From positions 1 through 64,000 of IMG/VR virus record IMGVR_UViG_3300010430_000003: a stretch of DNA of 64,000 bases. One strand, 5' to 3'. Position numbers and translations under genes: made by a program. This document shows, piece after piece, positions 38,977-63,423 of this stretch (position 1 is the first letter of the stretch; each line of letters starts with the position of its first letter). Below the pieces are notes generated by a model that worked only from the letters and a program-made list of their open reading frames with translations, ran no database searches and was not told where the DNA came from.

Positions 38977-39015
38977 ATCCTCTTGATGACTATTTAAGTT
39001 GCAAGAGGATTTTTT
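38977..39015 (+). promoter_or_regulatory. Hairpin enclosing TATTTA, with the SD in the 3' arm
   Basis: ATCCTCTTG (38977-85) / CAAGAGGAT (39002-10) form a perfect 9-bp inverted repeat; TATTTA at 38991-96 is in the loop; a T-run follows; ATG at 39016. Confidence 0.7.
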
Positions 39016-39549
39016 ATGTCTTTAATCACTGTTAAAAAACGTCGGAAGGTCTATGTACAAGGTCAAAAAGCAGAATTGCGTATCAAGGGTGATTGGCATT
39101 GGGCTCATTATTATCTCGCAATATTTGCCTTTATTTCAAATATCTTTATTAAGGGATATAAAAAGAGATTCATGGAAGATTTCATTACCGTAAGTAAAGT
39201 TATCAAACCAGTTATTTATATTCCTATCAATCGCAAGGGAATCTCAAAGCAATCTCTTGAGCATGAGGTTGTTCACCTAAAACAAATGGGCGGTTTTTTC
39301 AAGAAGGTTGCTTATTCGTTTAATTATTTGTTAAGACCTAAAAAGAGATTTTTCTATGAATTGGAAGCCTATGAAGTCGAGCTTGGTTATATCTTGAAAG
39401 AAGAAGGAGAAATTCCTATTCGTGATAGAATTAAATATGCCAAGATAATGTCTAGCAAAATGTATTATAGCCCTGTTTCTTTTGAAGTTGCCTTGGAAGA
39501 AGTTCATAAGGTTTGTGATAAAATGGAGAAAGAGAGTGTCAATATTTAA
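39016..39549 (+). CDS. Putative zincin-like metallopeptidase (HExxH)
   Basis: SLEHEVVHLKQ plus downstream ELEAY; one hydrophobic segment near the N-terminus. Confidence 0.6.
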   Translation: MSLITVKKRRKVYVQGQKAELRIKGDWHWAHYYLAIFAFISNIFIKGYKKRFMEDFITVSKVIKPVIYIPINRKGISKQSLEHEVVHLKQMGGFFKKVAYSFNYLLRPKKRFFYELEAYEVELGYILKEEGEIPIRDRIKYAKIMSSKMYYSPVSFEVALEEVHKVCDKMEKESVNI

Positions 39550-40627
39550 GTTTAAAGAAGAGGACATCTTCAGAAATACAGTTAGAACACATCCTTATGT
39601 GTCCTTTTTTATTTATGACGGAGAGATTTATCACAATCAACTCTTCCCCTCTTCTTCGTTGGGAGTATATTCCTTCATAACAAAACAAGGAACTCGCGAA
39701 TCATTTAAGACAGTTTCAACTTCTGAGTTTAATGAAAACTTTTTGTTTGGTGACACTCTAACTGGTAGTTCTATATCATATTTTTCAAGCACCTTGGAAC
39801 GAACAAGATATGATTCAAGTGCAAGAACTAAGATTAATGCTCTAAGAAATACGTTGGATTATTACAAGTATATTAGCCCACACTTTGCATATTCTTCTGA
39901 TTTGGGTAATAAGTCATCACAAGATATCAATTTAATTGAAATACCTGCCATCTTCTATGGGTCACGGATAAAACCAAAAAGCATGGAATGTAAGTTTTAT
40001 GTATCAGGTACGCTTGTTGGACATATTCAAGATCAGAACGGAAATGGTGAACTTATTCAAATAGGGCCAGAAGGAAGCGTCGGTTCTGGTTCTGTGGCGG
40101 GAGTTGTTTTATATAAAGAAGGTTTCTTGATTCTTACAGGTAGTTGGGATTTAACAGAAGAGGGTTTTGACTTCGAAGATGGTGCGGGCAATATTGATGG
40201 CAATTGGACTCACTTTGGAGGTGGCATTGATCCTTCTTTTGGGCCAAGTGTGATGCCCGAGATTTCATTTGAAATGAATTTTTCAGGGACACAAAGGGTG
40301 CAGAATGTTACGATGATGTGTCATGCTCTTGAGAGTGAATTGAATTATTCAAATAATCCCACATATGTTCAATACGGTCAGAAGAATACTGGTTCCTTAG
40401 ATTATGCTACCAAAACTCAATATAAAGAAGACGCACAACTTGTGATCAAAAATATTGCAAATAACGGTTATGCAGACCCCACTGGAAGTTTTGAGAAAAT
40501 TACATATATTAGTAAAGTTAAAATTTATGACGAAGATATGAACGTGATTGGTGTGGCAAAATTAGCTCAACCATTAAAGAAAAAAGAAAATCGTTCGTAT
40601 ACTGTTAAACTAAGTGTAGATGTGTGA
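39536..40627 (+). CDS. Putative tail/baseplate structural protein, paralog of 30829..31890
   Basis: ELNYSNNPTY...ISKVKIYDEDMNVIGVAKLAQPLKK; likely GTG start at 39536 (ORF track starts at 39482). Confidence 0.6.
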   Translation: MSIFKFKEEDIFRNTVRTHPYVSFFIYDGEIYHNQLFPSSSLGVYSFITKQGTRESFKTVSTSEFNENFLFGDTLTGSSISYFSSTLERTRYDSSARTKINALRNTLDYYKYISPHFAYSSDLGNKSSQDINLIEIPAIFYGSRIKPKSMECKFYVSGTLVGHIQDQNGNGELIQIGPEGSVGSGSVAGVVLYKEGFLILTGSWDLTEEGFDFEDGAGNIDGNWTHFGGGIDPSFGPSVMPEISFEMNFSGTQRVQNVTMMCHALESELNYSNNPTYVQYGQKNTGSLDYATKTQYKEDAQLVIKNIANNGYADPTGSFEKITYISKVKIYDEDMNVIGVAKLAQPLKKKENRSYTVKLSVDV

Positions 40628-40634
40628 GGTTTAA

Positions 40635-41156
40635 ATGATTGTAATTGGTCTTGATGTTTCAACTAGTATTACCGGCATAGCTGTAATGGATAATGGAAAA
40701 TTAATCCATTCTGTATCTGTTAATACAAAGAACAAAAAGCATTTCCCAGAACCCACCGATGTTGCCTTCAAAATTCGAGAAGAATTAATTAGTCTTAACT
40801 TATTGCCAGATAAGATTATAATAGAGGAGTCATTGTTTGGTTTTGCTGGCGGAAGAACAACAGCAAAAACTCTCATTAAACTTGCTCAAATAAATGGTTT
40901 GGTTTGTTTCATTTGTGAGGATTTATACAGACAGAAACCTGAAAAGATTTCTGCTCGGAAAGCTCGGAAGAAAGTTGGAATTGTTATACCTGCCAAAACT
41001 GATAGAAAAGAAGTAAAGAAAATTGTCTTGAAAGAGATGAATTCACGACTTGAAAATTTCACATTTGAACATACAATTCATGGGAATCCACGAGAAGAGG
41101 CGTTCGACCGAGCAGACGCCGCTGTAATCGCTTTATCCCATGATATAGATGAATGA
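40635..41156 (+). CDS. ruvC: RuvC-like Holliday junction resolvase
   Basis: VIGLDVSTSITGIA, IIIEES and DRADA supply the RNase H-fold acidic residues. Confidence 0.85.
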   Translation: MIVIGLDVSTSITGIAVMDNGKLIHSVSVNTKNKKHFPEPTDVAFKIREELISLNLLPDKIIIEESLFGFAGGRTTAKTLIKLAQINGLVCFICEDLYRQKPEKISARKARKKVGIVIPAKTDRKEVKKIVLKEMNSRLENFTFEHTIHGNPREEAFDRADAAVIALSHDIDE

Positions 41157-42090: not shown

Positions 42091-42099
42091 GGGAAAGAA

Positions 42100-45798: not shown

Positions 45799-45802
45799 TA
45801 TT

Positions 45803-49401: not shown

Positions 49402-49426
49402 TTAGATAATTAGTTTGATGATGTGG

Positions 49427-49452
49427 CGAGACACACCGTGTCTCGTTTTTTT
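49427..49452 (+). terminator. Intrinsic terminator
   Basis: CGAGACAC-ACC-GTGTCTCG 8-bp stem followed by T7. Confidence 0.85.
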
Positions 49453-49475
49453 GTGTCTAAGGTGAATGAAAAATC

Positions 49476-49481
49476 TATTTA
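49476..49481 (+). promoter_or_regulatory. TATTTA late-promoter-like motif upstream of terminase
   Basis: TCTATTTAAG between the terminator and the GTG start at 49498. Confidence 0.5.
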
Positions 49482-51172: not shown

Positions 51173-53212
51173 ATGGCAAATAAGATTAAGAAGCATGTTA
51201 GGAACCCTGAATCTACGTTATTCAAGAGATTAACGAGAGTATTCTCTGGTCCTATCACAAACAGAAGATCACAGACTTATAAAAGGCTGCGCATGCAGCA
51301 CATGGATAAGTATGCTAATAAATTCAAGACTGTTACTGGTCAATCATTCAAGAAATCAGCATACAATCCCGCTTCGATGTTACAGTCTGAGCGCATTTTA
51401 AATTATAATCGAGCAGAGCGTTATAAGGAATTTAACCAATTTGAGTTCATTGCAGAAACTTCTGCCGCCCTAAATATTTACGCTGATGAATTAACTCTAT
51501 CTACTACATTAAGTCCAATTCTTAAAATTGATTGTCCTAATGAAGAGATAAAAATTGTTCTTGAGTCTTTATATTATAACATTCTTAATGTAGAGCAGAA
51601 CCTCTATTGGTGGTCTCGTAATATGGTTAAATATGGAGACTTCTTTCTCTATATTGATATTGAAGAAGGTGAGGGAGTTGTTGGAGTTCTTGGGTTACCT
51701 CCTGCTGAAATTGAAATTCTGGAGGGCGAGGATGAAACAAATCTCAATTATATCCAGTACCAATGGAACTCTCGTGGCTTAACATTTGAAAATTGGCAAA
51801 TTGCCCATTTCCGGAATCTTGGTGATGATAAGTATTCACCATATGGTCAAAGCGTATTTGACCCAGTAAGACGTCATGTTCGACAGTTAATGCTTCTTGA
51901 AGATACAATGATGTCTTATCGTATTGTTCGCTCTCCTGAAAGAAGGGTATATTATATTGATGTTGGTGATATTGCATCACAAGATGTAGAGCAGTATGTT
52001 GAGAAAGTAATCACTTCAATGAAGCGCCATACGATTGTTGATGAAGATAGTTCAAGAATTGATTTAAGATATAATCCATGGAATGTTGAGGAAGATATTT
52101 ATATCCCTGTGCGAGCAGGCAACAATACAAGAGTTGAATCTCTGCCCGGTGGTTCGTTTGTCGGAGACATTGATGATGTTAAGTACATCAGAGATAAAGT
52201 CCTCACAGGTCTTCTAATCCCGTTCTCATACCTCTCACGAGAAGAAACAGGAGAGAGTCAAGAAACTCTTGCACAAAAAGACGTTCGCTTTGCTAGCGCG
52301 ATTCAGAGACTTCAACAGCCTGTAATTGCTGAGCTTGAGAAGATTGGTCAAGTGCACCTTTTGTCTCTTGGTTATGAGAGCGAAGATATTGTTTCTTTCA
52401 AACTTGGTCTCAACAACCCATCAAGAATTGCAGAACTTCAACACCTTGAAGAATTTAGAACAAAACTTGAAACTTCTTTACAAGCTCAAGAAATGTTCTC
52501 ATATCGATGGATCGCCCAGAACATTCTAAACCTTTCTGAAGATGAAGCTATGCGTATTAAGAGAGAAAGGTATCATGATGCTAAATATGAAGCAATCCTC
52601 ACAGGAATTAAGGAAGGTGATATTAATGGTGAGTTGGGCATGCCGTCAGAAGAAGGAGATTTATTGGGTCTCGGCGATGGAGAGATGGATCTCGATGCTG
52701 AACCAGAAGCTGGAGGTGATGACTTAGGTCTTGATCCCGAACCAGATGATTTGGGTGGCGGTGATGATGACGGAGGTCTTTTAGTTACTCCTGATGATGA
52801 ACCTGGCCCTTCACCCGGCAAAAGGGATGAATATGTAACTGCTGGCTCTAAAGGGAAAGAGTACAAAAGAGTCGCTACTGATAAAAGAAGAGGTATGGGT
52901 CCTCGCAAGAAGAACTATGCAGGCAAGGTATCTTCTGAAAAGGGGAGAAATACCAAAAGAAATATAGTTCCCGGTGTGAAACATAAAATCAACTCTTTAG
53001 CTTATGGGATTACCGAAGAGCAAGATATTGATGAAATTCTTAAAGAAATGTTTGGAGATATCGAAGAAGACAAGAAAGTTGTTAATTATTCAAAAATTGA
53101 GAGAGATTTCCGAAAAAGCAATCAGGGCACCAAAAAAGTATTGACTGAAATTAAGGATGCTTTAACTAAAGGTGAATATAATAGATTAAACACTGAACAA
53201 GGAGAAGAATGA
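51173..53212 (+). CDS. gp20: Portal protein (T4 gp20-like) with acidic/basic C-terminal extension
   Basis: PYGQSV, YRIVRSPERRVYYIDVG, EDIYIP, VESLPGG. Confidence 0.95.
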   Translation: MANKIKKHVRNPESTLFKRLTRVFSGPITNRRSQTYKRLRMQHMDKYANKFKTVTGQSFKKSAYNPASMLQSERILNYNRAERYKEFNQFEFIAETSAALNIYADELTLSTTLSPILKIDCPNEEIKIVLESLYYNILNVEQNLYWWSRNMVKYGDFFLYIDIEEGEGVVGVLGLPPAEIEILEGEDETNLNYIQYQWNSRGLTFENWQIAHFRNLGDDKYSPYGQSVFDPVRRHVRQLMLLEDTMMSYRIVRSPERRVYYIDVGDIASQDVEQYVEKVITSMKRHTIVDEDSSRIDLRYNPWNVEEDIYIPVRAGNNTRVESLPGGSFVGDIDDVKYIRDKVLTGLLIPFSYLSREETGESQETLAQKDVRFASAIQRLQQPVIAELEKIGQVHLLSLGYESEDIVSFKLGLNNPSRIAELQHLEEFRTKLETSLQAQEMFSYRWIAQNILNLSEDEAMRIKRERYHDAKYEAILTGIKEGDINGELGMPSEEGDLLGLGDGEMDLDAEPEAGGDDLGLDPEPDDLGGGDDDGGLLVTPDDEPGPSPGKRDEYVTAGSKGKEYKRVATDKRRGMGPRKKNYAGKVSSEKGRNTKRNIVPGVKHKINSLAYGITEEQDIDEILKEMFGDIEEDKKVVNYSKIERDFRKSNQGTKKVLTEIKDALTKGEYNRLNTEQGEE

Positions 53213-54880: not shown

Positions 54881-54889
54881 GGAAGGAAA

Positions 54890-55027
54890 ATGACTGAAGA
54901 AAATAAAGGATGGATTTGTCCAAAGTGTGGACAAGTATATGCTCCTACGGTTGAGAAGTGTTCGACCTGCATTCCAGAACCTGTTAAGGAAAACCAAGAA
55001 AAGAAGAAGAAGATATTAAAGGATTAA
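54890..55027 (+). CDS. 45-aa zinc-ribbon micro-protein MTEENKGWICPKCGQVYAPTVEKCSTC...
   Basis: Read manually; GWICPKC...CSTC; GAGGAAGG upstream. Confidence 0.75.
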   Translation: MTEENKGWICPKCGQVYAPTVEKCSTCIPEPVKENQEKKKKILKD

Positions 55028-55028
55028 T

Positions 55029-55340
55029 ATGACTGGAATTATTACGTTTATTTTAATATGTTACGGCGCAACTAGCATAATTGTTAACGGCAAGATTTTT
55101 GAGAACGTGCGTGGAAAAAGTTATATGCTTAACTGCCAAATGTGCATGGGTTTTTGGGTTGGTCTCCTTGTTGCATACTTAGACTATAATACTCATCTTT
55201 TTACATTTGACAATAACATTGTAACATTAGTAATGTTGGGTGCTCTTTCATCTGGAACAAGTTATATTCTTGATAGACTATTTAATGATGATGGAATCCA
55301 ACTAAGTTTGGGAGTTAAAGGTGAAGGAAATTCTGAATAG
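55029..55340 (+). CDS. Membrane protein, DUF1360-like
   Basis: LNCQMCMGFWVG (C..C...W) flanked by hydrophobic helices. Confidence 0.6.
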   Translation: MTGIITFILICYGATSIIVNGKIFENVRGKSYMLNCQMCMGFWVGLLVAYLDYNTHLFTFDNNIVTLVMLGALSSGTSYILDRLFNDDGIQLSLGVKGEGNSE

Positions 55341-55671
55341 TTGGAAAAAGTATCTTAATGAAGAACCTTTAGCTGAAGCCAAGGTTTATTCTCTTGGAGA
55401 TCAATATGCAATTGCGTTTCATCCTGAAAATATAGTTTATGTTACTCAACGTGGTGGTATGCAGCAAAAAAAGAAATGGTTTCTTCAAACGGATGATGAG
55501 TCGTATAAATATCTTATGAGTGTTTTGCGTAAAGCAGATCCATATCAAGTAGAAGTAACAAGAGATGAATTATTAAGAGGTCGTTATGGTAAGTTAACTG
55601 TAGTGGGTCATCAATTACCTGATGATGACGATGAGATTGAAACAATTGATGATATCAGTTTTGACTTTTAG
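55321..55671 (+). CDS. Hypothetical protein, possible internal head protein
   Basis: N-terminal MKEILNSWKKYLNE leader ending in L-x-E; GTG start. Confidence 0.5.
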   Translation: MKEILNSWKKYLNEEPLAEAKVYSLGDQYAIAFHPENIVYVTQRGGMQQKKKWFLQTDDESYKYLMSVLRKADPYQVEVTRDELLRGRYGKLTVVGHQLPDDDDEIETIDDISFDF

Positions 55672-55681
55672 GAGGTGACAA

Positions 55682-55747
55682 ATGTTCAAGTCAAGAAAAC
55701 TGCGGTATCCCCGCAGATGTAAATCTGGTTGCATACTAAAATCCTGA
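55682..55747 (+). CDS. 21-aa basic micro-ORF MFKSRKLRYPRRCKSGCILKS
   Basis: Read manually; preceded by AGGAGGTGA (55670-78), the strongest SD match noticed in the window. Confidence 0.5.
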   Translation: MFKSRKLRYPRRCKSGCILKS

Positions 55748-55770
55748 GCAAGATGTAAAACTGCTCGTTT

Positions 55771-55821
55771 CCTTTTTCTAAACTATATATTTATAGATGT
55801 GTATAACATTTAGAGAAAGGT
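55771..55821 (+). promoter_or_regulatory. Hairpin enclosing TATTTA, with the SD in the 3' arm (prohead protease gene)
   Basis: CCTTTTTCTAAA (55771-82) / TTTAGAGAAAGG (55809-20), 12 bp with one G-U; TATTTA at 55788-93; ATG at 55825. Confidence 0.65.
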
Positions 55822-55824
55822 ATT

Positions 55825-56448
55825 ATGTCACAACAGTTTTTAATCAAAGAATTCTTAAGCTTCAAGAATGAAGCAGACTCTGTCGAGGCAGTTTTAACAG
55901 AGCAAGAAAAAGTTGAGAGAAATAACGGCACCATGTTCCTTGTTGGTGTTGTACAGCGAGCCGATGCTGAAAATGGCAATGGCCGCCGCTATCCCCGCAA
56001 AATTTTAGAAAGAGAAGTTGTCAACTATATGAAGTTGGTTCGAGAGAGCCGCTCCGTTGGTGAATGTGATCATCCAGGCGATGACCGAGTAGAGATTGAA
56101 TTAAAAAATGTATCTCACGTTATTACTGATCTTTGGTGGGAAGGACAAGACCTTAAAGGAAAGTTGAAAATTCTTAACACTCCTTGTGGTCAAATTGTAA
56201 GCAACTTAGTTAAAGATGGAATTACACTTGGTATCTCTTCACGAGGCTTAGGATCAACAAGACAAGATACTCGTGGTAATACAATTGTTGAAGATGATTT
56301 TCAATTGATTTGTTGGGACATCGTTTCAGAACCTAGCACTCAAGGAGCCTTCGTAACACCCTTAAGAGAGGGAGTTAATTATACTAGGAAGGTATTTGAT
56401 AAATCTTATCGCATTAATTGTCTACTTAATAATATTGTGGAAGAGTGA
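55825..56448 (+). CDS. gp21: Prohead protease (T4 gp21-like)
   Basis: NGNGRRYP, GECDHP (catalytic His), GISSRGLGS (catalytic Ser), WDIVSEPS. Confidence 0.95.
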   Translation: MSQQFLIKEFLSFKNEADSVEAVLTEQEKVERNNGTMFLVGVVQRADAENGNGRRYPRKILEREVVNYMKLVRESRSVGECDHPGDDRVEIELKNVSHVITDLWWEGQDLKGKLKILNTPCGQIVSNLVKDGITLGISSRGLGSTRQDTRGNTIVEDDFQLICWDIVSEPSTQGAFVTPLREGVNYTRKVFDKSYRINCLLNNIVEE

Positions 56449-56451
56449 GCA

Positions 56452-56895
56452 ATGAAACAAGAAGAATTTGAAAGGCTGGTAGAAAGAATTGTAGAAGAGA
56501 AAATTAAAGAAAAATTAGAAGAGAGAGTGGAAGCCCTTTTCTATAAGACTCTTGTTGAAAGTAACATGATGTCTAACATCATCTCAACAATTTATGAGAA
56601 CATGGAGCGTGAAGACAAAATTCCGCTAAAAGAGTCTAAGGTAGAAACAACCCTAAAAGCAAAGCCGCGAAGAAAACCAACCCCAAATCCCGCCATTGAA
56701 TCAATGGGAATGTACTTTGAAGGGACTAGTCCTATTGATGATGCTGAAGGCGGTTCTGCTAAATTGAAAGCGGAATCTCTTCAAGAAGGAGTTCGACCAG
56801 AACTAATTGGTGACGAGGGTGTTGATTTAGGAATTTTTGCTAACGTTGCTGATTTTTGGCGTGATGATGTTGAGAAATATAATAGTGGTGAATAA
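56452..56895 (+). CDS. Acidic hypothetical protein (prohead core-like)
   Basis: Glu-rich with repeated L-x-E (LVE, LKE, LQE). Confidence 0.5.
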   Translation: MKQEEFERLVERIVEEKIKEKLEERVEALFYKTLVESNMMSNIISTIYENMEREDKIPLKESKVETTLKAKPRRKPTPNPAIESMGMYFEGTSPIDDAEGGSAKLKAESLQEGVRPELIGDEGVDLGIFANVADFWRDDVEKYNSGE

Positions 56896-57150
56896 ATGAA
56901 GAGAAAAAGAGCAAGACGCAATACAAAGTTCATGGAATATTTTGATAACTGTAATGTAGAAGTGTTTGTAGACGACTACGATAGTTTAGATAAGGCCATT
57001 AGAAAGTTTACTAAGAAAGTTAAGGAAGATGGTGTATTAGAACAATGTTGGGAAGCTAAAGTATATGAGAAACCTTCTGATAAAAAGCGAAGAAAGAGGA
57101 AGGAAGCAAAATATAATAGAAAAAAGAATCTCACTAAGAATAAGTATTAA
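56896..57150 (+). CDS. rpsU: Ribosomal protein bS21 (phage-encoded)
   Basis: VEVFVDDYDSLDKAIRKFTKKV..GVL...YEKPSDKKRRKRK matches the bS21 pattern. Confidence 0.88.
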   Translation: MKRKRARRNTKFMEYFDNCNVEVFVDDYDSLDKAIRKFTKKVKEDGVLEQCWEAKVYEKPSDKKRRKRKEAKYNRKKNLTKNKY

Positions 57151-57158
57151 TATATAAT

Positions 57159-57218
57159 TTCCTTTATAAGCGATATTGCCATATTTATAGTGCAATATTG
57201 TATTTTCCTTTATAGGAG
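57159..57218 (+). promoter_or_regulatory. Hairpin enclosing TATTTA upstream of the scaffold gene; imperfect outer stem reaches the AGGAG SD
   Basis: CGATATTGC (57171-79) / GCAATATTG (57192-200), 9 bp with one G-U; TATTTA at 57182-87; TTCCT (57159-63) can pair with AGGAG (57214-18). Confidence 0.55.
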
Positions 57219-57227
57219 TGTTTCATA

Positions 57228-58886
57228 ATGTCTTCTTTGCTTAAGCAAGCTATAATCGACGCCAATCTATTAAAAGAGTCGGCAGAACAACAGGCTGAAA
57301 AAGCCATCCTCGAAAAATATTCATCTGAAATTAAAGATGTATACGAATCAATGCTAGAAGTAGCACCCGATCCTCTTGCCGATATGGCAGGGGAAAAGTC
57401 TGCTGAAAGAGATCTTGATTTCGAAGATGATCTTGATTTCGAAGGCGATTCAATGGATGCACAAATTCCCTATTCATTCTCTGATGGCGAAGAAATGATG
57501 GGTGCTCCTAATGAAGAAGAGGAGATCGAAATCGACTTTGATAAACTTGCCGCAATGCTTGGGGATGTTGAACCCGATGTTGATATGGATGAGCCACTGG
57601 GAATGGATATGGGTCTTGCAGGCGGAGATGAAGACGTAGAAGATTTAGAAATGGGCGCTCCCCCTGAAGAAGAATTCCCAACTCCTCGCCTTAAAGAAGC
57701 AGACAAATTTAAGTTTCAAAGCAAAGCGATGGGCAATGCCCCCGAAGACAGATTAAAAAACGTATCTCCTAATGTTAAAGACAAAGATGTTAAAACTGCT
57801 CCAAAGAGTGTTGTTGAGCCGGTTGATGCTATTGATGTAGAAGAAGGAAGATCAACAGTTTGTGAAAAGTGCGGTGCAACTCATATGGGTGAAGCTTGTT
57901 CTGGCCAAGTACACGAGGGAGAAGTTGAAGACCATCTTGAACTAAGAATCCAAAAGGCGCGTGAAGCATTTGAAGAATATACTAAGGCATCCAAAGCAGC
58001 AAGAAAGCAACCGGATCAATATCCAACTGGAGCAACGCCAGTTATTGCTGCTTTTGAAAGAAAAGCTGAAGAGGCTAGAAAAGAATATATTCGATTGCAA
58101 AATGTTCTTCGCAACCGTTTGAAAGCGGCAAGTGGAGAAGATCCTGATGCTGATTATCAAGCTGATAAACCATCATGGATGAGTGAGGAAGGAGAACTTG
58201 AAGAGAAAGTCGTAATGGATGACACTGGTAATAAGTCAGGTTGGACATCCAGATCAACTGACATTCTCGCACATGAACTTGATAAAGTTATCTCTCACAA
58301 TAAGTTTGATAAAACGGATGGTGAAGAATTTAAAGATGGGGATTATAAGAAGGACTTAGAAGATAAGGACACTGAATATGACTCATTAAAAGAAGAATAC
58401 AACATTCTTAAAAAGAATTTTAAAGAAATTTTCAAAGAAAATTCGAATTTGAAAGAAGTGAAGAGTAATTATGAAGTAAGAGTAGTATCGTTATCTGATA
58501 AGAATAAACAATTCCTATCTTTGCTTGAAAGAGCACAACAGGAATTGCAAGAAAATCAACTTAAGATGACAAAGCTATTTTTTGAAAATAAGGTATTTAG
58601 GGATGCCTCCTTGAATGAGCGACAAAAAAATAATATTGTCGAAGTCATTTCTGAAATTGATACCGCTGAGCAAATTAAGCCTGTTTATGAAGCGCTTTTG
58701 AAAACTAAGGGAACGGTTACTCAAAAAAGAGAATCGTCAAACTCTTTACATGAAGCACTTAAAAATAGACCCAAAATCGCTCGGATGGCTGCCGCCGCTA
58801 AAGATAGTGGGGAGTCAAAGGAACAGCAAGTTAACAGCGATCCTCTAACGGAGAGGATGCAAAAACTGGCTGGGATTAAGAAATAA
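57228..58886 (+). CDS. Prohead scaffolding/core protein (gp22-like), long and acidic
   Basis: Immediately upstream of the capsid gene; coiled-coil C-terminus ending RMQKLAGIKK; many L/F/I-x-E sites. Confidence 0.75.
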   Translation: MSSLLKQAIIDANLLKESAEQQAEKAILEKYSSEIKDVYESMLEVAPDPLADMAGEKSAERDLDFEDDLDFEGDSMDAQIPYSFSDGEEMMGAPNEEEEIEIDFDKLAAMLGDVEPDVDMDEPLGMDMGLAGGDEDVEDLEMGAPPEEEFPTPRLKEADKFKFQSKAMGNAPEDRLKNVSPNVKDKDVKTAPKSVVEPVDAIDVEEGRSTVCEKCGATHMGEACSGQVHEGEVEDHLELRIQKAREAFEEYTKASKAARKQPDQYPTGATPVIAAFERKAEEARKEYIRLQNVLRNRLKAASGEDPDADYQADKPSWMSEEGELEEKVVMDDTGNKSGWTSRSTDILAHELDKVISHNKFDKTDGEEFKDGDYKKDLEDKDTEYDSLKEEYNILKKNFKEIFKENSNLKEVKSNYEVRVVSLSDKNKQFLSLLERAQQELQENQLKMTKLFFENKVFRDASLNERQKNNIVEVISEIDTAEQIKPVYEALLKTKGTVTQKRESSNSLHEALKNRPKIARMAAAAKDSGESKEQQVNSDPLTERMQKLAGIKK

Positions 58887-58913
58887 CATTAGATTAAAAA
58901 GGAAAACTTACTC

Positions 58914-60614
58914 ATGTCTGGTAAAATCGTTGAAAAGTTAACCGGTGACATTCAATCCTACGATGTAGTGAAAGAAGGTCAACTTTTGGTTAATAAATGG
59001 ACGCGAGCCGGTCTTCTTGAAGGCATCTCTGATGACGTAAAAAGAACCAATATGGCTCGTTTGCTTGAGAACCAAGCAAAACAAATTCTAAAAGAGGCTT
59101 CCACTATGGCAGCCGGTGACGTCGAAGGTTACGCTTCTGTAGCGTTCCCCCTCGTTCGTCGAGTATTCGGTAATCTTCTGGCTAATGACCTTGTGTCAGT
59201 TCAGCCAATGAATCTTCCTGCGGGACTGATTTTCTTCTTGGATTTCCAATACAATTCATCTCGCCTTGGGAGCGTTGCTGAAGATTCAGTATTCGGTCAA
59301 GGCATTGTCGGTCGCGAGTTGACTGGTGGTGTTGATCTTTCAAATGCTGAGCAGGATAAAGGCCCGTATAACCTGAATAACGGTTATTCAAGCCCGACTG
59401 CTTCATTTACTGTCACAACCACACTGCTCGCTTCTGGTACAGTAGGCGCATCAACAAATTCAGGCTCTAATGCTGATGTTGATAAGCTTGTTAAATATGA
59501 TCCTGACTTGTCGGGTTCAACTGTTGCGATTGCAACTGTTCCACTTTCAGAGCTTACCACTGGTGGCAATGAATTTAATGAGAGTGACCTTGTCGCTCTT
59601 AACTTCACTAACCTTTCAAGCTCTGGTGCAGCTTATCGACAAATTCGTCGACTTACAAGCTACTCTGGTTCGAAGACAGACGGAACTCTGTTATTTGTGA
59701 TTGAAGTGGCGTCAGGCTCACATACTGAGGTCCTTGCAGGTGCTGCTATTGATGCGGTAACTACACTTGATGCTCCGCTTGCTGATAACTTCGATGGCGG
59801 CGGCGCTCTCGGTTCTGTTGTTGGTGCTGATGTTTGGGGCCTTGAGGCTGACGAAGGTATTCCTGAGTTGGATATCAAAGTTGATTCCATCGCTCTGACA
59901 GCTATCACCAAAAAGCTGAAAGCTAAATGGTCTCCTGAGCTTGGTCAAGACCTCAATGCTTATCATAATGTCGATGCGGAAGTTGAGCTTACCTCAATTC
60001 TTGCTGAGCACATTGAGCTTGAGATTGATCGAGAGATCTTGGAAGATCTTACTAAGCTTGCTACAGGCTCGACAAAGTTCTGGTCACGACTTCCGGGTAA
60101 GTTTGTGAACGAGGACACTGGTGCGGATATTTCTAATACTACTGCACCGCCTGACTTCACCGGTAACGTATCCGAGTGGTACGAAACACTTATCGAGAAA
60201 GTCAATGGCGTCTCGGCTGTTATTCAGCGTAAGATTCTGTCTGGTGGAGCTAACTTCCTTGTTTGCTCACCTGAAGTTGCCAATATCCTTGAGTTTACTA
60301 ACGGATTCCGTGGAAACGTTTCAGTGGGCGAAGAGCGTGGTACTGCCGGTGCGGTTAAAACTGGTCAGATCAACAAGAAGTTCGACGTATATGTCGATCC
60401 TTACTACTACCGAAATGGTCTTCTGGTAGGACGAAAGGGCTCCTCTTTCCTTGAAAGCGGATTTGTATATGCTCCTTATGTCCCTCTGCAGATGACACCA
60501 ACCATCTTCGGTACTGAGGACTTCGTGCCTCGTAAGGGCGTCATGACACGCTATGCGAAGAAGATGGTTCGTCCTGACTTCTATGGCACGGTCATTGTCC
60601 TAGACCTTGTATAA
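58914..60614 (+). CDS. gp23: Major capsid protein (T4 gp23-like)
   Basis: LLENQ, PLVRRVF..L.A..LVSVQPM..P.GLIF, KLKAKWSPELGQDL.A.H..DAE.EL..IL, ESGFVYAPYVPL, KGVMTRY. Confidence 0.97.
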   Translation: MSGKIVEKLTGDIQSYDVVKEGQLLVNKWTRAGLLEGISDDVKRTNMARLLENQAKQILKEASTMAAGDVEGYASVAFPLVRRVFGNLLANDLVSVQPMNLPAGLIFFLDFQYNSSRLGSVAEDSVFGQGIVGRELTGGVDLSNAEQDKGPYNLNNGYSSPTASFTVTTTLLASGTVGASTNSGSNADVDKLVKYDPDLSGSTVAIATVPLSELTTGGNEFNESDLVALNFTNLSSSGAAYRQIRRLTSYSGSKTDGTLLFVIEVASGSHTEVLAGAAIDAVTTLDAPLADNFDGGGALGSVVGADVWGLEADEGIPELDIKVDSIALTAITKKLKAKWSPELGQDLNAYHNVDAEVELTSILAEHIELEIDREILEDLTKLATGSTKFWSRLPGKFVNEDTGADISNTTAPPDFTGNVSEWYETLIEKVNGVSAVIQRKILSGGANFLVCSPEVANILEFTNGFRGNVSVGEERGTAGAVKTGQINKKFDVYVDPYYYRNGLLVGRKGSSFLESGFVYAPYVPLQMTPTIFGTEDFVPRKGVMTRYAKKMVRPDFYGTVIVLDLV

Positions 60615-60635
60615 TCTAACCTAGTTTGGATTATG

Positions 60636-60663
60636 AAACCTCCCAGAAATGGGAGGTTTTTTT
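60636..60663 (+). terminator. Intrinsic terminator after the major capsid gene
   Basis: AAACCTCCCA-GAAA-TGGGAGGTTT followed by a T-run. Confidence 0.92.
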
Positions 60664-60675
60664 ATTATATCATTA

Positions 60676-60703
60676 TTGATTTGCTGTTCTGTGTTAATAT
60701 AAT
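60676..60703 (+). promoter_or_regulatory. Sigma70-like promoter for the accessory island
   Basis: TTGATT (60676-81), 16 nt spacer, TATAAT (60698-703); AAGG upstream of ATG 60721. Confidence 0.55.
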
Positions 60704-60720
60704 AAAGGTAAGGAATCTTT

Positions 60721-60942
60721 ATGAATAAAGACAACATTAATTTGATGATGAGTTCCGTATATGTCCATGAAATTTTGTGGGGAGCAACTATGGATACGGG
60801 CTTCGCATGTTATTTCTCCTTGGGGCGTAGAAGGTCATCCTCATATTGGATGAGATGCAACTATGGTTTTATAGCAAAAGTGAAAGGGGAAAACCAATTC
60901 ATACAAGGTTATTATCCCTCTTGCAGCATCACTCTTGTATGA
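60721..60942 (+). CDS. Hypothetical protein
   Basis: 73-aa ORF after the promoter and SD. Confidence 0.5.
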   Translation: MNKDNINLMMSSVYVHEILWGATMDTGFACYFSLGRRRSSSYWMRCNYGFIAKVKGENQFIQGYYPSCSITLV

Positions 60943-60951
60943 AAGAATAAT

Positions 60952-61278
60952 ATGAAAAATGGTTTTCTAAAGAAAATTTTTGAAAGTGGATATGTCTATG
61001 CACCCTATATACCGATGCAAGTAACGCGAAATTTCAACCAGTCCCCGAAATATAAAACAGAGGTTGTGGCGGAGAATATTAATAAAATCATTGCAATGCA
61101 TTGGGTTTTGGATACAGTGCAATTTCATATGGTTCATCGGGTTGGTAACCCACACCTCCGCAAACGAACTGTGGATTTTGACGTGTCGAACATGTATGGA
61201 TTTCAAATGAGATATTATGATCAATATTGCCCTCTCAGAATAAGAGTAGCTTTAAACTGGTTAAGACAATATGAATGA
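60952..61278 (+). CDS. Small protein carrying a copy of the major capsid ESGxVYAPYxPxQxT motif
   Basis: Residues 11-25 ESGYVYAPYIPMQVT versus capsid ESGFVYAPYVPLQMT (60453-60497). Confidence 0.75.
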   Translation: MKNGFLKKIFESGYVYAPYIPMQVTRNFNQSPKYKTEVVAENINKIIAMHWVLDTVQFHMVHRVGNPHLRKRTVDFDVSNMYGFQMRYYDQYCPLRIRVALNWLRQYE

Positions 61279-61558
61279 AGTAATGGCTCATAAAGCCCGC
61301 GCCACTGGCTCACGTTCCAATCGCCATCGCCGACGCAGGAGAGGTCGTCGCAGCCACCACCGTATTTCCATGGAGCCTAAAGATATTAATTTGTATGTTG
61401 CTCGGCATTGTCTGGTTCCACGAGTCACTTTTATTGAAGCATTTCTATTTTTTAGAAAATCATCTTATTCTTGTAATAATCTTTACCGGGCACACGGCCC
61501 CGCTAATATACAGGATGTGAAGATGTGGTTAAATGTTCGCGCTGAGAGCCAGTTATAA
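61271..61558 (+). CDS. Arginine-rich small protein
   Basis: RSNRHRRRRRGRRSHHR tract. Confidence 0.5.
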   Translation: MNEVMAHKARATGSRSNRHRRRRRGRRSHHRISMEPKDINLYVARHCLVPRVTFIEAFLFFRKSSYSCNNLYRAHGPANIQDVKMWLNVRAESQL

Positions 61559-61560
61559 AA

Positions 61561-62217
61561 ATGAATGTGTTGTTATCATATCCAAGATCCGGCAATACGT
61601 GGACTCGTTATTGTGTTGAATTTCTGACAAAGAAGCCAACGCAAGGAGTTATGGGTTCTTCCGCAACAATTAAGACGCCTATGGGATTGCATAATTCTGA
61701 TATGGAAGTGGATTTTGAGCAAGAAACAATCTTGAATAAATTTCACCATCCACCGGAGTGTGTTGGAATTCGACCCCTCCCAGAAAAGCTGATATTGCTG
61801 GTTAGAAATCCTCTAGAAAGCATCACAAGACATGATCCCGCAAGCATTCCAGCCTTCACTATCCCATCAATACGACACTATATAAGCTTGTTGTATTATT
61901 ATGATTTGTTTGAAAATGAAAAAATGATTGTGTTTTATGAGGACTTAATTAAAGACGAAACACTCCCCCACACTTTAAATGAAATTCTTGATTTCCTTGG
62001 TGAACCTAAAGATAATCTAATTCCTTTTATGGAGGGGATTGAATACCATCGTTCGGAAGGGGTGAGGATTTACAATACAAACGGAAACCGTTCTCAAACT
62101 GAAGGTAACGAAGAGAACTATCATAGAAAGAAAATCAAAATTGAAAGATCGTTAGAAAAACTTCTTGAATGGGATCAGGGTGGATATTTCCACAAATACT
62201 GTCATAGATATTTATGA
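61561..62217 (+). CDS. Sulfotransferase domain protein
   Basis: LSYPRSGNTW (5'-PSB loop), KFHH, LLVRNP (3'-PB), VFYEDL. Confidence 0.85.
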   Translation: MNVLLSYPRSGNTWTRYCVEFLTKKPTQGVMGSSATIKTPMGLHNSDMEVDFEQETILNKFHHPPECVGIRPLPEKLILLVRNPLESITRHDPASIPAFTIPSIRHYISLLYYYDLFENEKMIVFYEDLIKDETLPHTLNEILDFLGEPKDNLIPFMEGIEYHRSEGVRIYNTNGNRSQTEGNEENYHRKKIKIERSLEKLLEWDQGGYFHKYCHRYL

Positions 62218-62423
62218 ATTTATTGATTGCGCAATGTTATGTTAACTCTTGGATTGCATCATCTTTCGCGTGGCACACACCCGATCCGATGGTTTTTACT
62301 CCAAAACAAAGAAAGACAGTGATGGGTTGGGGATATTTTCCCTTAAGAGCATATAAAGATATAAAACTCTCCATTAATATAATTTTGGAAAATATAAAAT
62401 TCAATGACTTCTTTAAATGTTGA
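62214..62423 (+). CDS. Hypothetical protein
   Basis: 69-aa ORF, ATGA-coupled to the previous gene. Confidence 0.45.
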   Translation: MNLLIAQCYVNSWIASSFAWHTPDPMVFTPKQRKTVMGWGYFPLRAYKDIKLSINIILENIKFNDFFKC

Positions 62424-62985
62424 TATGAAAAAAGATATTAAACTAATTGTTATTTGTGGGCCTTCTGGTGTAGGGAAGACGTCAATTGCATCGTTTTTGG
62501 TAAAGAGGATTTGGAATTCCTGTTTTTGTGTTTCTCATACAACTCGGAAATCTAGAATTACTGAAATGGATGGAATTGATTATTATTTTGTGTCTGAAGA
62601 TAAGTTTGAACAAATGAAAAGCAATAATGAGTTTGCAGAACATGCCCATGTATATGGCCAACAATATGGAACATCATGGGATGTTGTTGAAGAAGACCTT
62701 GAAGATGAAATCAAGATTCTTGATGTTGATTATAACGGCGCTGAAGCGATCTACAGTAGATATCCAGACAACACCATTGTCTTTTCTATATTACCACCTT
62801 CAATCAAAGAACTCCAAACAAGGCTGAGGCTTCGTGGTACCGATTCTTTAGTTACAATACAGCAACGATTGTTGAGAATTGAAGAAGAGCTTGAATATGA
62901 ATTGCAAGTTCCTCATGTGGAAATTATCAATTCAGATATGAGAGAAACCCAGAAAATGGTTATGAAATGTCTTCAACCTCAATAA
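62404..62985 (+). CDS. gmk: Guanylate kinase (likely start 62425)
   Basis: GPSGVGKT, VSHTTR.SR..E.DG.DYYFVS, YGT, LRLRGTDS. Confidence 0.95.
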   Translation: MTSLNVDMKKDIKLIVICGPSGVGKTSIASFLVKRIWNSCFCVSHTTRKSRITEMDGIDYYFVSEDKFEQMKSNNEFAEHAHVYGQQYGTSWDVVEEDLEDEIKILDVDYNGAEAIYSRYPDNTIVFSILPPSIKELQTRLRLRGTDSLVTIQQRLLRIEEELEYELQVPHVEIINSDMRETQKMVMKCLQPQ

Positions 62986-63179
62986 ATCTTGATGTGGTGC
63001 ATTCTTGGATATCTTCTAACTGGTATTGGTATGTTCAAACTCATCACTCTCGCGATCAGATAAATAAGAGGGAGAGTTTTATAGTAATACAAGACTATAT
63101 TGAGGTTGAGGAGATGATTGCTGAAGCTCTCCATGAAGGAATTCTTGATCTTTTTGAGAATGATTATTATGAATATTGA
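62967..63179 (+). CDS. Hypothetical protein
   Basis: 70-aa ORF overlapping its neighbours. Confidence 0.45.
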   Translation: MSSTSINLDVVHSWISSNWYWYVQTHHSRDQINKRESFIVIQDYIEVEEMIAEALHEGILDLFENDYYEY

Positions 63180-63354
63180 AATTGCACGTTTATGGTTCGT
63201 ATCATACTGGTGGGGATTTGTTGTTGATGATGCTTGTCATCATACTGTTGATGATAATTCAAGAACAAGTTATATGCATCTCACAATATGTGAAGACTAT
63301 TATGAAATGGTTGATGATGCTCTTTATTATGGAATTTTAAGTGTAGTTCAATAA
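63118..63354 (+). CDS. Hypothetical protein (likely start 63169)
   Basis: Short ORF closing the island. Confidence 0.45.
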   Translation: MLKLSMKEFLIFLRMIIMNIEIARLWFVSYWWGFVVDDACHHTVDDNSRTSYMHLTICEDYYEMVDDALYYGILSVVQ

Positions 63355-63375
63355 TCATAAATCAAAATTTTAGAT

Positions 63376-63423
63376 AAAGCCTCTTGTTGTAGCTATTTAT
63401 TAGTGAATAACAAGAGGCTTTTT
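63376..63423 (+). promoter_or_regulatory. Hairpin enclosing TATTTA, with the SD in the 3' arm (neck gene)
   Basis: AAAGCCTCTTGTT (63376-88) / AACAAGAGGCTTT (63409-21) form a perfect 13-bp inverted repeat; TATTTA at 63394-99; GAGG in the right arm; TTG start at 63426. Confidence 0.75.

What the first reader, a model, noticed from the sequence alone, without database searches (positions are those of the whole stretch)
38977..63423. Promoter-in-the-loop hairpins that hide the Shine-Dalgarno: a repeated late-gene switch
Seen at four sites with different stem sequences but the same layout: 38977-39010 (9 bp perfect), 55771-55820 (12 bp, one G-U), 57171-57200 (9 bp plus an imperfect outer stem) and 63376-63421 (13 bp perfect). 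In each the TATTTA motif is in the loop. In three the SD is in the 3' arm, and two are followed by T-runs. A weaker fifth case lies at 22331-22377. Known: T4 silences a few genes (e, soc, 49, I-TevI) on early read-through RNA with an RBS-sequestering hairpin whose 5' arm is absent from late transcripts. Inference: this phage applies that logic systematically to protease, scaffold, neck and a peptidase gene, possibly doubling as terminators.
Basis: partly seen in the sequence, partly recalled or inferred. Interest (0 to 1): 0.75.

Follow-up and report, generated by a model that had tools for sequence, protein, structure and literature searches.

The report
Late-promoter-in-loop hairpins hiding ribosome sites
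A distant marine relative of phage T4 places a late-promoter-like motif inside RNA hairpins that bury the ribosome-binding site of three or four virion-module genes, the trick T4 uses for lysozyme and a few other genes, so this is a well-supported new example of a known switch.

Summary
The hairpins are real, at the stated coordinates, and not chance. Sites 1, 2 and 4 (38977-39010, 55771-55820, 63376-63421) each carry TATTTA in the loop and the Shine-Dalgarno in the 3' arm. They rank among the most occluded ribosome sites of about 300 genes in the 210-kb phage genome. The computed cost of opening the ribosome site is 13-22 kcal/mol on read-through RNA. It is 2-3 kcal/mol on RNA started about 6-7 nt after the motif, matching my T4 gene e control (15.9 versus 3.8/0.8).

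The site 4 stem is kept in five lineages with four compensated pairs. Site 1 shows U-A to U.G to C-G.

The motif, [A/C]TA[T/C/G]TTA, is strand-specific and lies 15-30 nt before start codons. It precedes terminase, protease, scaffold/capsid, neck, sheath and tube genes, and it replaces TATAAATA in 79 related uncultured loci. It is very probably the late promoter.

Site 3 has the motif in a hairpin loop but does not hide its SD. Site 5 has no motif and looks like a translational-coupling hairpin. Sites 1 and 4 also look like terminators.

No RNA data exist, so the start sites are inferred. Verdict: a new member of the T4 e/soc/49 class, used at several genes but not systematically.

The parts
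38977..39010 (+). Site 1 hairpin. 5' arm 38977-38985, loop 38986-39001 with motif cTATTTA (38990-38996), 3' arm 39002-39010 holding SD AAGAGGA. T-run 39010-39015, ATG 39016 (177-aa protein of unknown function).
   Evidence: MFE -15.2, z -4.8. Ribosome-site opening cost 13.3 (long) versus 3.0 (short) kcal/mol. The stem is kept in L089, L091 and L092, with U-A, U.G and C-G at one pair and a re-positioned 5' arm in L092.
55771..55820 (+). Site 2 hairpin. 5' arm 55771-55782, loop 55783-55808 with aTATTTA (motif 55788-55793), 3' arm 55809-55820 holding SD GAGAAAGG. ATG 55825 (prohead protease, Peptidase_S77 / gp21-like).
   Evidence: z -4.1. Opening cost 13.0 versus 2.2 kcal/mol. Kept in L082 and L083 with only C-to-U (G.U-preserving) changes; absent in L085/L086.
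57170..57201 (+). Site 3 hairpin (10 bp, two G.U) with aTATTTA at 57182-57187 in the loop. SD AGGAG 57214-57218 and ATG 57228 (552-aa scaffold candidate, then major capsid protein) lie outside it.
   Evidence: z -2.7. No long/short difference (5.7 versus 6.8). The motif and 3' side are invariant in all relatives, but the 5' arm is not conserved in L085/L086.
63376..63421 (+). Site 4 hairpin. 5' arm 63376-63388, loop with cTATTTA (motif 63394-63399), 3' arm 63409-63421 holding SD AAGAGG 63412-63417. T-run 63419-63423, TTG start 63426 (gp13-like neck / head-tail adaptor).
   Evidence: MFE -26.9, z -8.4. Opening cost 22.2 versus 3.1, rank 1 of 301. Five lineages: 4 of 13 pairs compensated, 93.8% of cells paired, 2-7 of 500 shuffles reach this. 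L103 has a different stem with CTAATTA in the loop. gp13 identity from PF26809 and phrog_211.
22327..22381 (+). Site 5: a 13-bp (three G.U) hairpin covering the SD and the A of ATG 22381. It has no promoter motif. The 5' arm 22327-22339 lies in the last codons of the upstream ORF (stop 22339-22341).
   Evidence: opening cost 8.6; z -3.1. Read as a translational-coupling hairpin, not part of the promoter-in-loop set.
60635..60660 (+). Canonical intrinsic terminator after the major capsid gene (11 bp, GAAA tetraloop, T-run). It shows what an ordinary terminator looks like in this phage.
   Evidence: z -4.9. Conserved with compensatory changes in L083 and L085.
60676..60703 (+). Sigma70-like promoter (TTGATT-16-TATAAT) heading the variable small-gene cluster 60721-63354, which runs into site 4.
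   Evidence: The equivalent TTGATA-16-TATAAT sits after the terminator in L085. The cluster is not conserved between relatives.
49425..49481 (+). Uncompacted version of the arrangement. A canonical terminator (49425-49447) is followed 28 nt later by the motif cTATTTA (49475-49481), about 25 nt before the terminase ATG.
   Evidence: conserved in L083 and L085.
35634..35639 (+). Motif site without a hairpin, 37 nt before ATG 35677. Conservation with L089 begins exactly at TATTTA and runs to the start codon.

Best explanation
These are differential-leader switches of the T4 e/soc/49/I-TevI type.

The phage's late promoter is a -10-like element, [A/C]TA[T/C/G]TTA, with no -35. It is presumably read by the phage's gp55-like sigma. 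At sites 1, 2 and 4 it sits in the loop of an RNA hairpin whose 3' arm contains the Shine-Dalgarno.

RNA arriving from upstream carries both arms. The hairpin forms, the ribosome site is locked (13-22 kcal/mol to open), and the gene is not translated. At sites 1 and 4 the stem is followed by a U-run, so much of that RNA probably also terminates there.

RNA initiated about 6-7 nt after the motif starts in the loop or at the first bases of the 3' arm. It lacks the 5' arm and has an open ribosome site (2-3 kcal/mol). Each such gene is therefore expressed only from its own late promoter.

Shown: the hairpins, their exceptional stability, selection for pairing at sites 4 and 1, and the motif's strand bias, position and gene association.

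Inferred: that the motif is a promoter, where transcription starts, termination, and the translational effect.

Site 3 shares only the motif-in-loop geometry. Site 5 is a different device.
For: - Hairpins and statistics.
- Long versus short leader energies: site 1, 13.3/3.0; site 2, 13.0/2.2; site 4, 22.2/3.1. The T4 positive controls with the same script gave gene e 15.9 versus 3.8 and 0.8, gene 49 16.1, and soc 8.7 versus 5.1. T4 e is reported as 100-fold repressed on long RNA (PMC3014915).
- No upstream ORF ends within 20 nt of any 5' arm at sites 1, 2 and 4. Ribosome-driven melting is therefore unavailable, and a conserved prohead protease and neck protein need another route to translation.
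- Covariation at site 4: 4 of 13 pairs changed on both sides, 93.8% of cells paired, and 2-7 of 500 shuffles reach the observed values. Slid controls give 38-68% paired.
- Covariation at site 1: U-A to U.G to C-G, and a 5' arm re-created at another distance in L092.
- An orthologous site with an unrelated stem and a variant motif in the loop occurs in L103.
- G.U pairs and C-to-U changes fit RNA on the + strand, not a DNA cruciform.
- Motif in this genome: TATTTA in 24 upstream regions versus 6.9 expected, CTATTTA 10-fold enriched. It is concentrated in the 30-90 kb virion module, 7 of 18 versus 3 of 52, Fisher p=0.002.
- The motif precedes TerL, protease, scaffold/MCP, the gp13-like gene, a head protein, the tail sheath and the tail tube.
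- Motif in 79 distant loci: ATATTTA in 81 upstream regions versus 7 for its reverse complement, and TATAAATA in only 5. The distance to the start codon peaks at 15-30 nt, with A/C at -1 and no flanking conservation.
- Conservation begins at the motif.
- A gp55-like ORF is present (phrog_234, E 8.6e-7).
- Site 4 has the T4-like geometry: a conserved terminator, then a sigma70-like promoter, then variable small genes running into the hairpin.
Against: - No transcript 5' or 3' ends are available. No RNA run was listed.
- The motif differs from the T4 and cyanophage late promoter (N)ATAAATA.
- The gp55-like match is weak, and its profile also hits cellular sigma factors. No gp45 clamp was found with phrog_223.
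- The site 2 stem is lost in the 74%-identity relatives, and site 3 has no SD effect.
- In distant relatives, motif-spanning stems are only marginally more frequent than with a control flank (13 versus 8 of 145 at p<=0.05). The device is occasional, not a rule.
- The genes upstream of sites 1 and 2 are not shown to be early.
- Only 3-5 lineages are available per site.
Confidence: 0.62

Rival explanations
1. Terminator-first reading. The hairpins at sites 1 and 4 are primarily intrinsic terminators, or 3'-end stabilisers, that insulate transcription units. The next promoter is squeezed into the loop to save space, and SD occlusion is a by-product of the short promoter-to-start distance rather than a selected translational switch.
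For: - U-runs directly follow the stems at sites 1 and 4, and A-tract/U-tract outer pairs are invariant at site 4.
- An uncompacted terminator-then-motif arrangement lies before terminase.
- Distant loci have perfect terminator-like stems whose short loop is the motif itself, followed by T-runs (L007:3072, L010:3320).
- With leaders of 19-31 nt, a 3' arm almost has to overlap the SD.
Against: - Site 2 has no U-run, yet it has a 12-bp SD-covering stem.
- Loops of 16-26 nt are unlike the 3-4-nt loops of this phage's clear terminators, and the terminator scan does not list these sites.
- Even after partial read-through, the RNA would still have a locked SD, so the two effects cannot be separated and probably coexist.
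Confidence: 0.2
2. The motif is an RNA-level signal, such as an endonuclease processing site or the binding site of a translational regulator. The hairpins display it in a loop, and processing or binding there, not a new transcription start, controls access to the SD.
For: - The AU-rich motif sits at the apex of an inner mini-helix in sites 1, 2 and 4.
- Strand specificity and a fixed distance upstream of start codons fit an RNA signal as well as a promoter.
- The phage carries its own ribosomal protein bS21, hinting at unusual translation control.
Against: - Most motif sites, here and in relatives, are not in hairpins.
- A cut in the loop would leave a 9-15-bp duplex intact.
- A motif with no flanking conservation, 15-30 nt before the starts of virion genes specifically, mirrors T4-type late promoters.
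- No Rfam family matches the window.
Confidence: 0.1
3. DNA-level element. The inverted repeats extrude as a cruciform or hairpin that presents the promoter single-stranded (as phage N4 early promoters do), or they are operators for a dimeric DNA-binding regulator.
For: Inverted repeats flank a promoter-like motif at four sites.
Against: - The arm sequences differ between sites, so there is no common operator.
- G.U (G.T) pairs and C-to-T changes keep pairing only in + strand RNA.
- Most motif sites have no inverted repeat.
- The arms track the SD sequence.
Confidence: 0.04
4. Chance. AT-rich intergenic DNA happens to contain palindromes, and TATTTA is a common AT-rich word.
For: The genome is 36.7% GC. 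Many 8-bp stems occur by chance (538 genome-wide).
Against: - The joint probability of the motif in the three large loops is about 1.5e-5.
- Folding z-scores are -4.1 to -8.4.
- Compensatory changes occur at sites 4 and 1.
- The sites are top-ranked for ribosome-site occlusion.
Confidence: 0.02

Closest known systems
Phage T4 gene e (lysozyme) leader hairpin with internal late promoters
   Same: An RNA helix covers the SD on transcripts coming from upstream. A late promoter lies between the arms, in the loop, so late RNA lacks the 5' strand and is translated. Computed opening costs are alike: T4 e 15.9 versus 3.8/0.8, here 13-22 versus 2-3 (PMC3014915).
   Different: The promoter word is [A/C]TATTTA rather than TATAAATA. 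The regulated genes are core morphogenesis genes (prohead protease, gp13-like neck protein), not lysis genes. Two of the hairpins are followed by U-runs and may also terminate. Nothing here has been tested experimentally.
T4 soc, gene 49, I-TevI/II/III and segB, and Aeh1 mobE ribosome-site-sequestering hairpins
   Same: Late genes lying downstream of earlier transcription units on the same strand are silenced on long polycistronic RNA and released by a promoter-proximal late start (PMC2988022). Site 4 has this geometry: a sigma70-like promoter plus a variable small-gene cluster upstream.
   Different: In T4 these are accessory or mobile genes. Here the device is conserved with covariation in front of a conserved structural gene across lineages at 81-92% protein identity, and it is rebuilt with another stem at 65%.
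Rho-independent (intrinsic) terminators, including terminator-promoter junctions between phage operons
   Same: GC-containing stem followed by a U-run at sites 1 and 4, with an A-tract on the 5' side at site 4. They sit at the boundaries of gene blocks.
   Different: The loops are 16-26 nt and carry a conserved sequence. The 3' arm is the SD of the next gene, and the U-run is the SD-to-start spacer. This phage's clear terminators have 3-4-nt loops.
Translational-coupling hairpins (as in RNA phage MS2 and many operons)
   Same: Site 5 only. A stem covers the SD and start of the downstream gene, and its 5' strand lies inside the end of the upstream ORF, so a terminating ribosome would open it.
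   Different: This does not apply to sites 1-4, where the 5' arm begins 20-100 nt after the upstream stop codon.

Membership tests
T4-type ribosome-site-sequestering leader hairpin with internal late promoter (e, soc, 49, I-TevI class) | A stable RNA helix includes the Shine-Dalgarno and/or start codon of the regulated gene | tested here: met
   Met at sites 1, 2 and 4, with opening costs of 13.3, 13.0 and 22.2 kcal/mol against a genome mean of 5.5 +/- 2.6. Not met at site 3 (5.7).
T4-type ribosome-site-sequestering leader hairpin with internal late promoter (e, soc, 49, I-TevI class) | A late promoter is positioned so that late transcripts lack the 5' strand of the helix | tested here: inconclusive
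   A strand-specific, position-specific, late-gene-associated motif lies in the loop at all four sites. Promoter activity and start sites could not be measured.
T4-type ribosome-site-sequestering leader hairpin with internal late promoter (e, soc, 49, I-TevI class) | Earlier or upstream transcription on the same strand reads into the gene | tested here: inconclusive
   All genes in the window are on the + strand. A conserved sigma70-like promoter heads the cluster upstream of site 4. There is no comparable evidence for sites 1 and 2, and no RNA data.
T4-type ribosome-site-sequestering leader hairpin with internal late promoter (e, soc, 49, I-TevI class) | Translation is repressed on long RNA and active on promoter-proximal RNA | not testable with these tools
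   Only computed energies are available. They are comparable to T4 e and gene 49 run through the same script.
T4-type ribosome-site-sequestering leader hairpin with internal late promoter (e, soc, 49, I-TevI class) | The helix is under selection (conserved or compensated in relatives) | tested here: met
   Site 4: 4 of 13 pairs compensated in 5 lineages, 2-7 of 500 shuffles. Site 1: one compensated pair plus a G.U intermediate, underpowered. Site 2 holds only in the ~91-92% relatives, and the site 3 5' arm is not conserved.
T4-type late transcription system (gp55 sigma, gp33, gp45 clamp; TATAAATA promoters) | The phage encodes a gp55-family late sigma | tested here: inconclusive
   The ORF at G000:209166-209882 matches phrog_234 at E 8.6e-7 as its only family. 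T4 gp55 itself finds nothing, and the profile also hits cellular genomes.
T4-type late transcription system (gp55 sigma, gp33, gp45 clamp; TATAAATA promoters) | Late promoters read TATAAATA | tested here: not met
   TATAAATA occurs only twice in intergenic DNA here and in 5 of 422 upstream regions of relatives. ATATTTA/CTATTTA dominate.
Intrinsic (Rho-independent) terminator | GC-rich stem, short loop (about 3-8 nt), U-run immediately 3' | tested here: inconclusive
   The stem and U-run are present at sites 1 and 4. Loops are 16-20 nt, or 5 nt if the weak inner helix forms. The consensus scan does not list them. Site 2 has no U-run.
N4-type DNA hairpin promoter | Promoter recognition requires an extruded hairpin at every promoter | tested here: not met
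   Nine of 13 intergenic motif sites have no significant flanking inverted repeat.

The most novel reading that the evidence does not exclude
A whole clade of uncultured marine T4-like phages has swapped the canonical late promoter TATAAATA for [A/C]TA(N)TTA, read by a divergent gp55-like sigma. In this lineage the phage builds three-in-one cassettes in which a single hairpin terminates incoming RNA, locks the next gene's ribosome site on any read-through, and carries the next late promoter in its loop. These would be compact transcription-unit insulators in front of essential morphogenesis genes.
Probability: 0.4. Interest if true: 0.6.

Novelty: new member of a known kind. Interest (0 to 1): 0.45.

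Why it matters
It extends the T4 promoter-inside-the-inhibitory-hairpin logic to a far-T4 lineage from marine sediment whose capsid is under 40% identical to that of any cultured phage. In T4 this logic was known for lysis, decoration and homing-endonuclease genes. Here it guards core assembly genes and is maintained by compensatory evolution.

It also yields a candidate late-promoter consensus, [A/C]TA[T/C/G]TTA, for a large group of uncultured T4-like phages. That would improve operon and timing annotation of such genomes. It also suggests compact terminator-promoter-ribosome-site parts of possible use in synthetic biology. None of this overturns current understanding.

Tried and rejected
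- RNA evidence: no RNA run was listed for the capsid region.
- DNA runs X3-X6 hold the same strain at low depth and show no variants.
- More relatives by pattern: the viral-contig scan with the site 3 block found only a fragment of the same phage. The metagenome-contig scan, anchored on the site 4 loop plus the coding start, found two contigs identical to the window.
- The megablast of 55000-60000 against cultured phages found nothing. The nearest cultured capsid and protease are 33-48% identical, so no relative with TSS data exists.
- The 80 IMG/VR loci found with the protease mostly have no spacer before the protease gene, so orthologous comparison of site 2 was impossible there.
- The test for motif-spanning stems in those loci was only marginal against a control flank (a first version timed out).
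- T4 gp55 and gp45 as single queries, and phrog_223, found nothing in the genome.
- The Logan contig behind L089 could not be extended towards site 5.
- Rfam: no family in the window.
- Literature: no paper describing an ATATTTA/CTATTTA phage late promoter was found in the held library.
- Sigma70-type promoters occur at chance level in 48-64 kb (46 versus 47.1). I therefore rejected the idea that TATTTA is a host -10 box; it also lacks the invariant final T.
- Other highly occluded 'starts' in the genome-wide ranking were tRNA-like false ORFs.

Full report
CONTEXT

The window is the first 64 kb of a 210,326-bp IMG/VR virus record with direct terminal repeats. Its GC content is 36.7%, and it is found in marine-sediment metagenomes. 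All long ORFs in the window are on the + strand.

The window carries a T4-like virion module:
- large terminase, 49498-51165
- portal, 51173-53212
- prohead protease, 55825-56448 (Peptidase_S77)
- major capsid protein, 58914-60614
- a gp13-like neck protein starting at 63426

No cultured phage is close. The capsid is at most 39% identical and the protease at most 48% identical to any cultured phage.

My own scan for stems of 8 bp or more with loops of 3-30 nt, and ViennaRNA folding, recover all four hairpins.

- Site 1: 38977-39010, 9 bp, loop 16 nt, z -4.8.
- Site 2: 55771-55820, 12 bp with one G.U, loop 26 nt, z -4.1.
- Site 4: 63376-63421, 13 bp perfect (15 with a G.U), z -8.4.
- Site 3: a 10-bp stem with two G.U, 57170-57201, z -2.7.

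TATTTA is in the loop of all four. The SD is in the 3' arm at sites 1, 2 and 4. T-runs follow sites 1 and 4.

The gene after site 4 starts at TTG 63426. The substitution pattern in relatives is codon-wise from that triplet, and the relative's gene call starts there.

In site 3 the SD (57214-57218) is outside the hairpin, and the proposed outer stem is not predicted. Site 5 (22327-22381) is a real hairpin but has no motif.

By contrast, the phage's evident terminators have 3-4-nt loops: 60635-60660 after the capsid gene and 49425-49447 before terminase.

MORE THAN CHANCE

- From the intergenic frequency of TATTTA (23 in about 12.7 kb), the probability that all three large loops contain it is about 1.5e-5.
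- Among 13 intergenic motif sites lying 8-45 nt before a start codon, four have a stem spanning the motif with shuffle p<=0.03 (38991, 55788, 57182, 63394). None does when the 5' flank is taken 60 nt further upstream. The binomial probability is 5e-4.
- I computed the free-energy cost of unpairing -16..+3 around every start codon in a 111-nt read-through context. The genome mean is 5.5 +/- 2.6 kcal/mol. Site 4 (22.2) ranks first of 301 and site 2 (13.0) ranks fourth. Site 1 scores 13.3; it is absent from the ranked list only because my crude gene caller used another start.
- Several other high scorers are tRNA-like false ORFs.

THE MOTIF BEHAVES LIKE A LATE PROMOTER

In this genome, TATTTA is the second most enriched hexamer in oriented upstream regions (24 regions versus 6.9 expected). 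CTATTTA is 10-fold enriched and TATTTATA 8-fold.

The motif lies 16-40 nt before the starts of these genes:
- terminase
- protease
- the scaffold/capsid pair
- the gp13-like gene
- a head protein (phrog_240)
- the tail sheath
- the tail tube

It is concentrated in the 30-90 kb virion module: 7 of 18 spaced + strand genes there, versus 3 of 52 elsewhere, Fisher p=0.002.

Where a relative can be aligned at a site with no hairpin (35634), conservation starts exactly at TATTTA and continues to the start codon. The DNA upstream has diverged.

In 79 loci of uncultured T4-like phages fetched with the protease (45-55% identity), I found the following:
- ATATTTA is the top upstream 7-mer: 81 regions versus 7 for its reverse complement.
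- Variants ATACTTA, ATAGTTA and CTATTTA are also enriched.
- TATTTA occurs in 127 of 422 upstream regions, TAAATA in 28 and TATAAATA in 5.
- Over 188 distinct sites the distance to the start codon peaks at 15-30 nt.
- Position -1 is A (70%) or C (20%).
- There is no conservation on either side, so no -35 element.

This is the architecture of T4-type late promoters with a different word. T4 and cyanophages use (N)ATAAATA (PMC2984593).

The genome has one gp55-like ORF (phrog_234, E 8.6e-7). I found no paper describing this motif in the held library. Sigma70-like promoters occur at chance level in 48-64 kb.

LONG VERSUS LATE-START LEADERS

I assumed a start 7 nt after the motif; offsets of 6-9 nt were also computed. 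In T4 the +1 is the sixth nucleotide after TATAAATA. Under that assumption the ribosome-site opening cost changes as follows:

| Site | Long leader (kcal/mol) | Short leader (kcal/mol) |
|---|---|---|
| 1 | 13.3 | 3.0 |
| 2 | 13.0 | 2.2 |
| 4 | 22.2 | 3.1 |
| 3 | 5.7 | 6.8 |

Site 3 shows no release of the ribosome site.

There the motif and its 5' flank themselves pair with the SD, and the cost is 10.6 versus 3.9.

As a positive control I ran the same script on T4. Gene e gave 15.9 versus 3.8 and 0.8 for its two late promoters. Gene 49 gave 16.1 for the long form. soc gave 8.7 versus 5.1. The T4 e structure lowers lysozyme synthesis 100-fold on long RNA (PMC3014915). In the T4 e fold, one TATAAATA occupies the loop, which is the same layout.

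At sites 1, 2 and 4 the upstream ORF ends 20-100 nt before the 5' arm. A terminating ribosome therefore cannot melt the stem. A conserved prohead protease and neck protein with a locked SD (and, for gp13, a TTG start) require some route such as an internal start.

CONSERVATION

Few relatives exist. Protein searches and contig look-ups gave lineages at about 70-85% DNA identity.

Site 4:
- The window, L083, L101, L085 and L102 align without gaps.
- The outer eight pairs never vary.
- Pairs 9, 11, 12 and 13 change on both sides (U-A to C-G, G-C to A-U, U-A to A-U twice).
- 93.8% of cells are paired.
- Only 2-7 of 500 column shuffles reach the observed values, and slid registers give 38-68% paired.
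- The loop GCTATTTAYTAGTGA is conserved in four of the five. L102 has CATAATTAC instead.
- L103 (65% protein identity) has an unrelated 16-bp stem covering its SD, with CTAATTA in the loop and an opening cost of 16.1.
- Two more distant lineages, L104 and L105, have no hairpin.

Site 1:
- The 3' arm, U-run and ATG are invariant.
- One pair runs U-A (window), U.G (L089), C-G (L091).
- In L092 a complementary 5' arm sits at a different distance.
- With three alignable sequences the shuffle test has no power.

Site 2:
- L082 and L083 keep the stem, with only C-to-U changes that preserve G.U pairing.
- L085 and L086 have neither the stem nor TATTTA; they read TATATAATAG.

Site 3:
- The motif and everything downstream are invariant.
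- The 5' arm is replaced by unrelated sequence in L085/L086.

In distant loci there are striking individual cases. In L007:3072 a 15-bp stem has a loop that is just acTATTTA, followed by a T-run and ATG. Others are L010:3320, L024:5449 and L041:17631. As a class, however, they are only marginally enriched over a control flank.

MECHANISM

The best reading is the T4 e/soc/49 logic. For sites 1 and 4 it is combined with termination. RNA from upstream forms the hairpin and stops at the U-run or, if it reads through, cannot be translated. RNA begun in the loop lacks the 5' arm.

Site 4 has the classical geometry. After the capsid gene comes a conserved terminator, then a sigma70-like promoter (60676-60703, with TTGATA-16-TATAAT in L085). 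A cluster of small genes follows, including a guanylate kinase, which differs between relatives and runs into the hairpin.

Before terminase, the same elements are laid out side by side rather than nested.

G.U pairs and one-sided C-to-U changes argue for RNA rather than a DNA cruciform. The different arm sequences argue against a common operator.

Site 3 may serve as a 3'-end structure for the protease-bS21 unit, or it may have no function. Site 5 looks like a coupling hairpin, because its 5' arm is inside the last codons of the upstream ORF.

WHAT IS NOT SHOWN

These steps are inferred, not shown:
- promoter activity
- start sites
- termination
- the translational effect
- the early status of upstream transcription at sites 1 and 2

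No RNA run was listed. The DNA runs add no variants.

VERDICT

It holds for three of the four listed sites plus one additional site, is not systematic, and 'peptidase' is unsupported. This is a new member of a known kind, of moderate interest. The clade-wide non-TATAAATA late-promoter candidate is the most novel by-product.

Noticed in passing
window 56896-57150: The phage encodes a ribosomal protein bS21 homologue (84 aa; PF01165 in orthologues, phrog_21469). It lies between the prohead-protease unit and the scaffold gene and is conserved in all close relatives.
   Followed up: partly
window 55727-55770: A 40-nt intergenic block (TGCATACTAAAATCCTGAG.AAGATGTAAAACTGCTCGTTT) just upstream of the site 2 hairpin is nearly invariant, even in the 74%-identity relatives where the hairpin itself is lost. 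It is more conserved than the neighbouring coding DNA, and its function is unknown.
   Followed up: no
L003-L081 (79 IMG/VR loci) and G000: A clade-wide upstream motif [A/C]TA[T/C/G]TTA (ATAATTA/CTAATTA may also belong), 15-30 nt before start codons and with no -35, replaces the T4/cyanophage late promoter (N)ATAAATA. I found no description of it in the searched literature.
   Followed up: partly
window 60676-63354: Between the capsid terminator and the gp13-like gene lies a cluster of small genes (including a guanylate kinase at 62404-62985) headed by a sigma70-like promoter. Its gene content differs in every relative, so it is a hypervariable accessory island inside the late module.
   Followed up: partly
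G000 74031-74079 (L093:11031-11079), outside the window: This is another long-versus-short leader case, before the tail sheath gene. The motif TCTATTTAA itself forms the 5' arm that pairs with the SD region (opening cost 10.6 versus 3.9 kcal/mol).
   Followed up: partly
It looks like a translational-coupling hairpin.
   Followed up: partly
L085:3725-7348: The portal gene of the 74%-identity relative is interrupted by an intein with a LAGLIDADG endonuclease domain. The window's portal gene (51173-53212) is not.
   Followed up: no
L087:18856-18946 (phage T4 gene 49 leader, - strand): The loop of the T4 gene 49 ribosome-site-sequestering hairpin reads CTATTTAA, identical to this phage's motif. 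This is probably coincidence.
   Followed up: no
G000 about 129.5, 131.0, 141.5 and 179.5 kb, outside the window: Several of the most structured 'start regions' are tRNA-like sequences (GGTTCGAATCC T-arms) miscalled as ORFs by my crude caller. The phage probably carries a set of tRNA genes.
   Followed up: no
L101:3163-3837: In one close relative, a Peptidase_C1 (papain-like) gene directly follows the gp13-like gene. The window's genome has a 95-aa ORF at that place.
   Followed up: no
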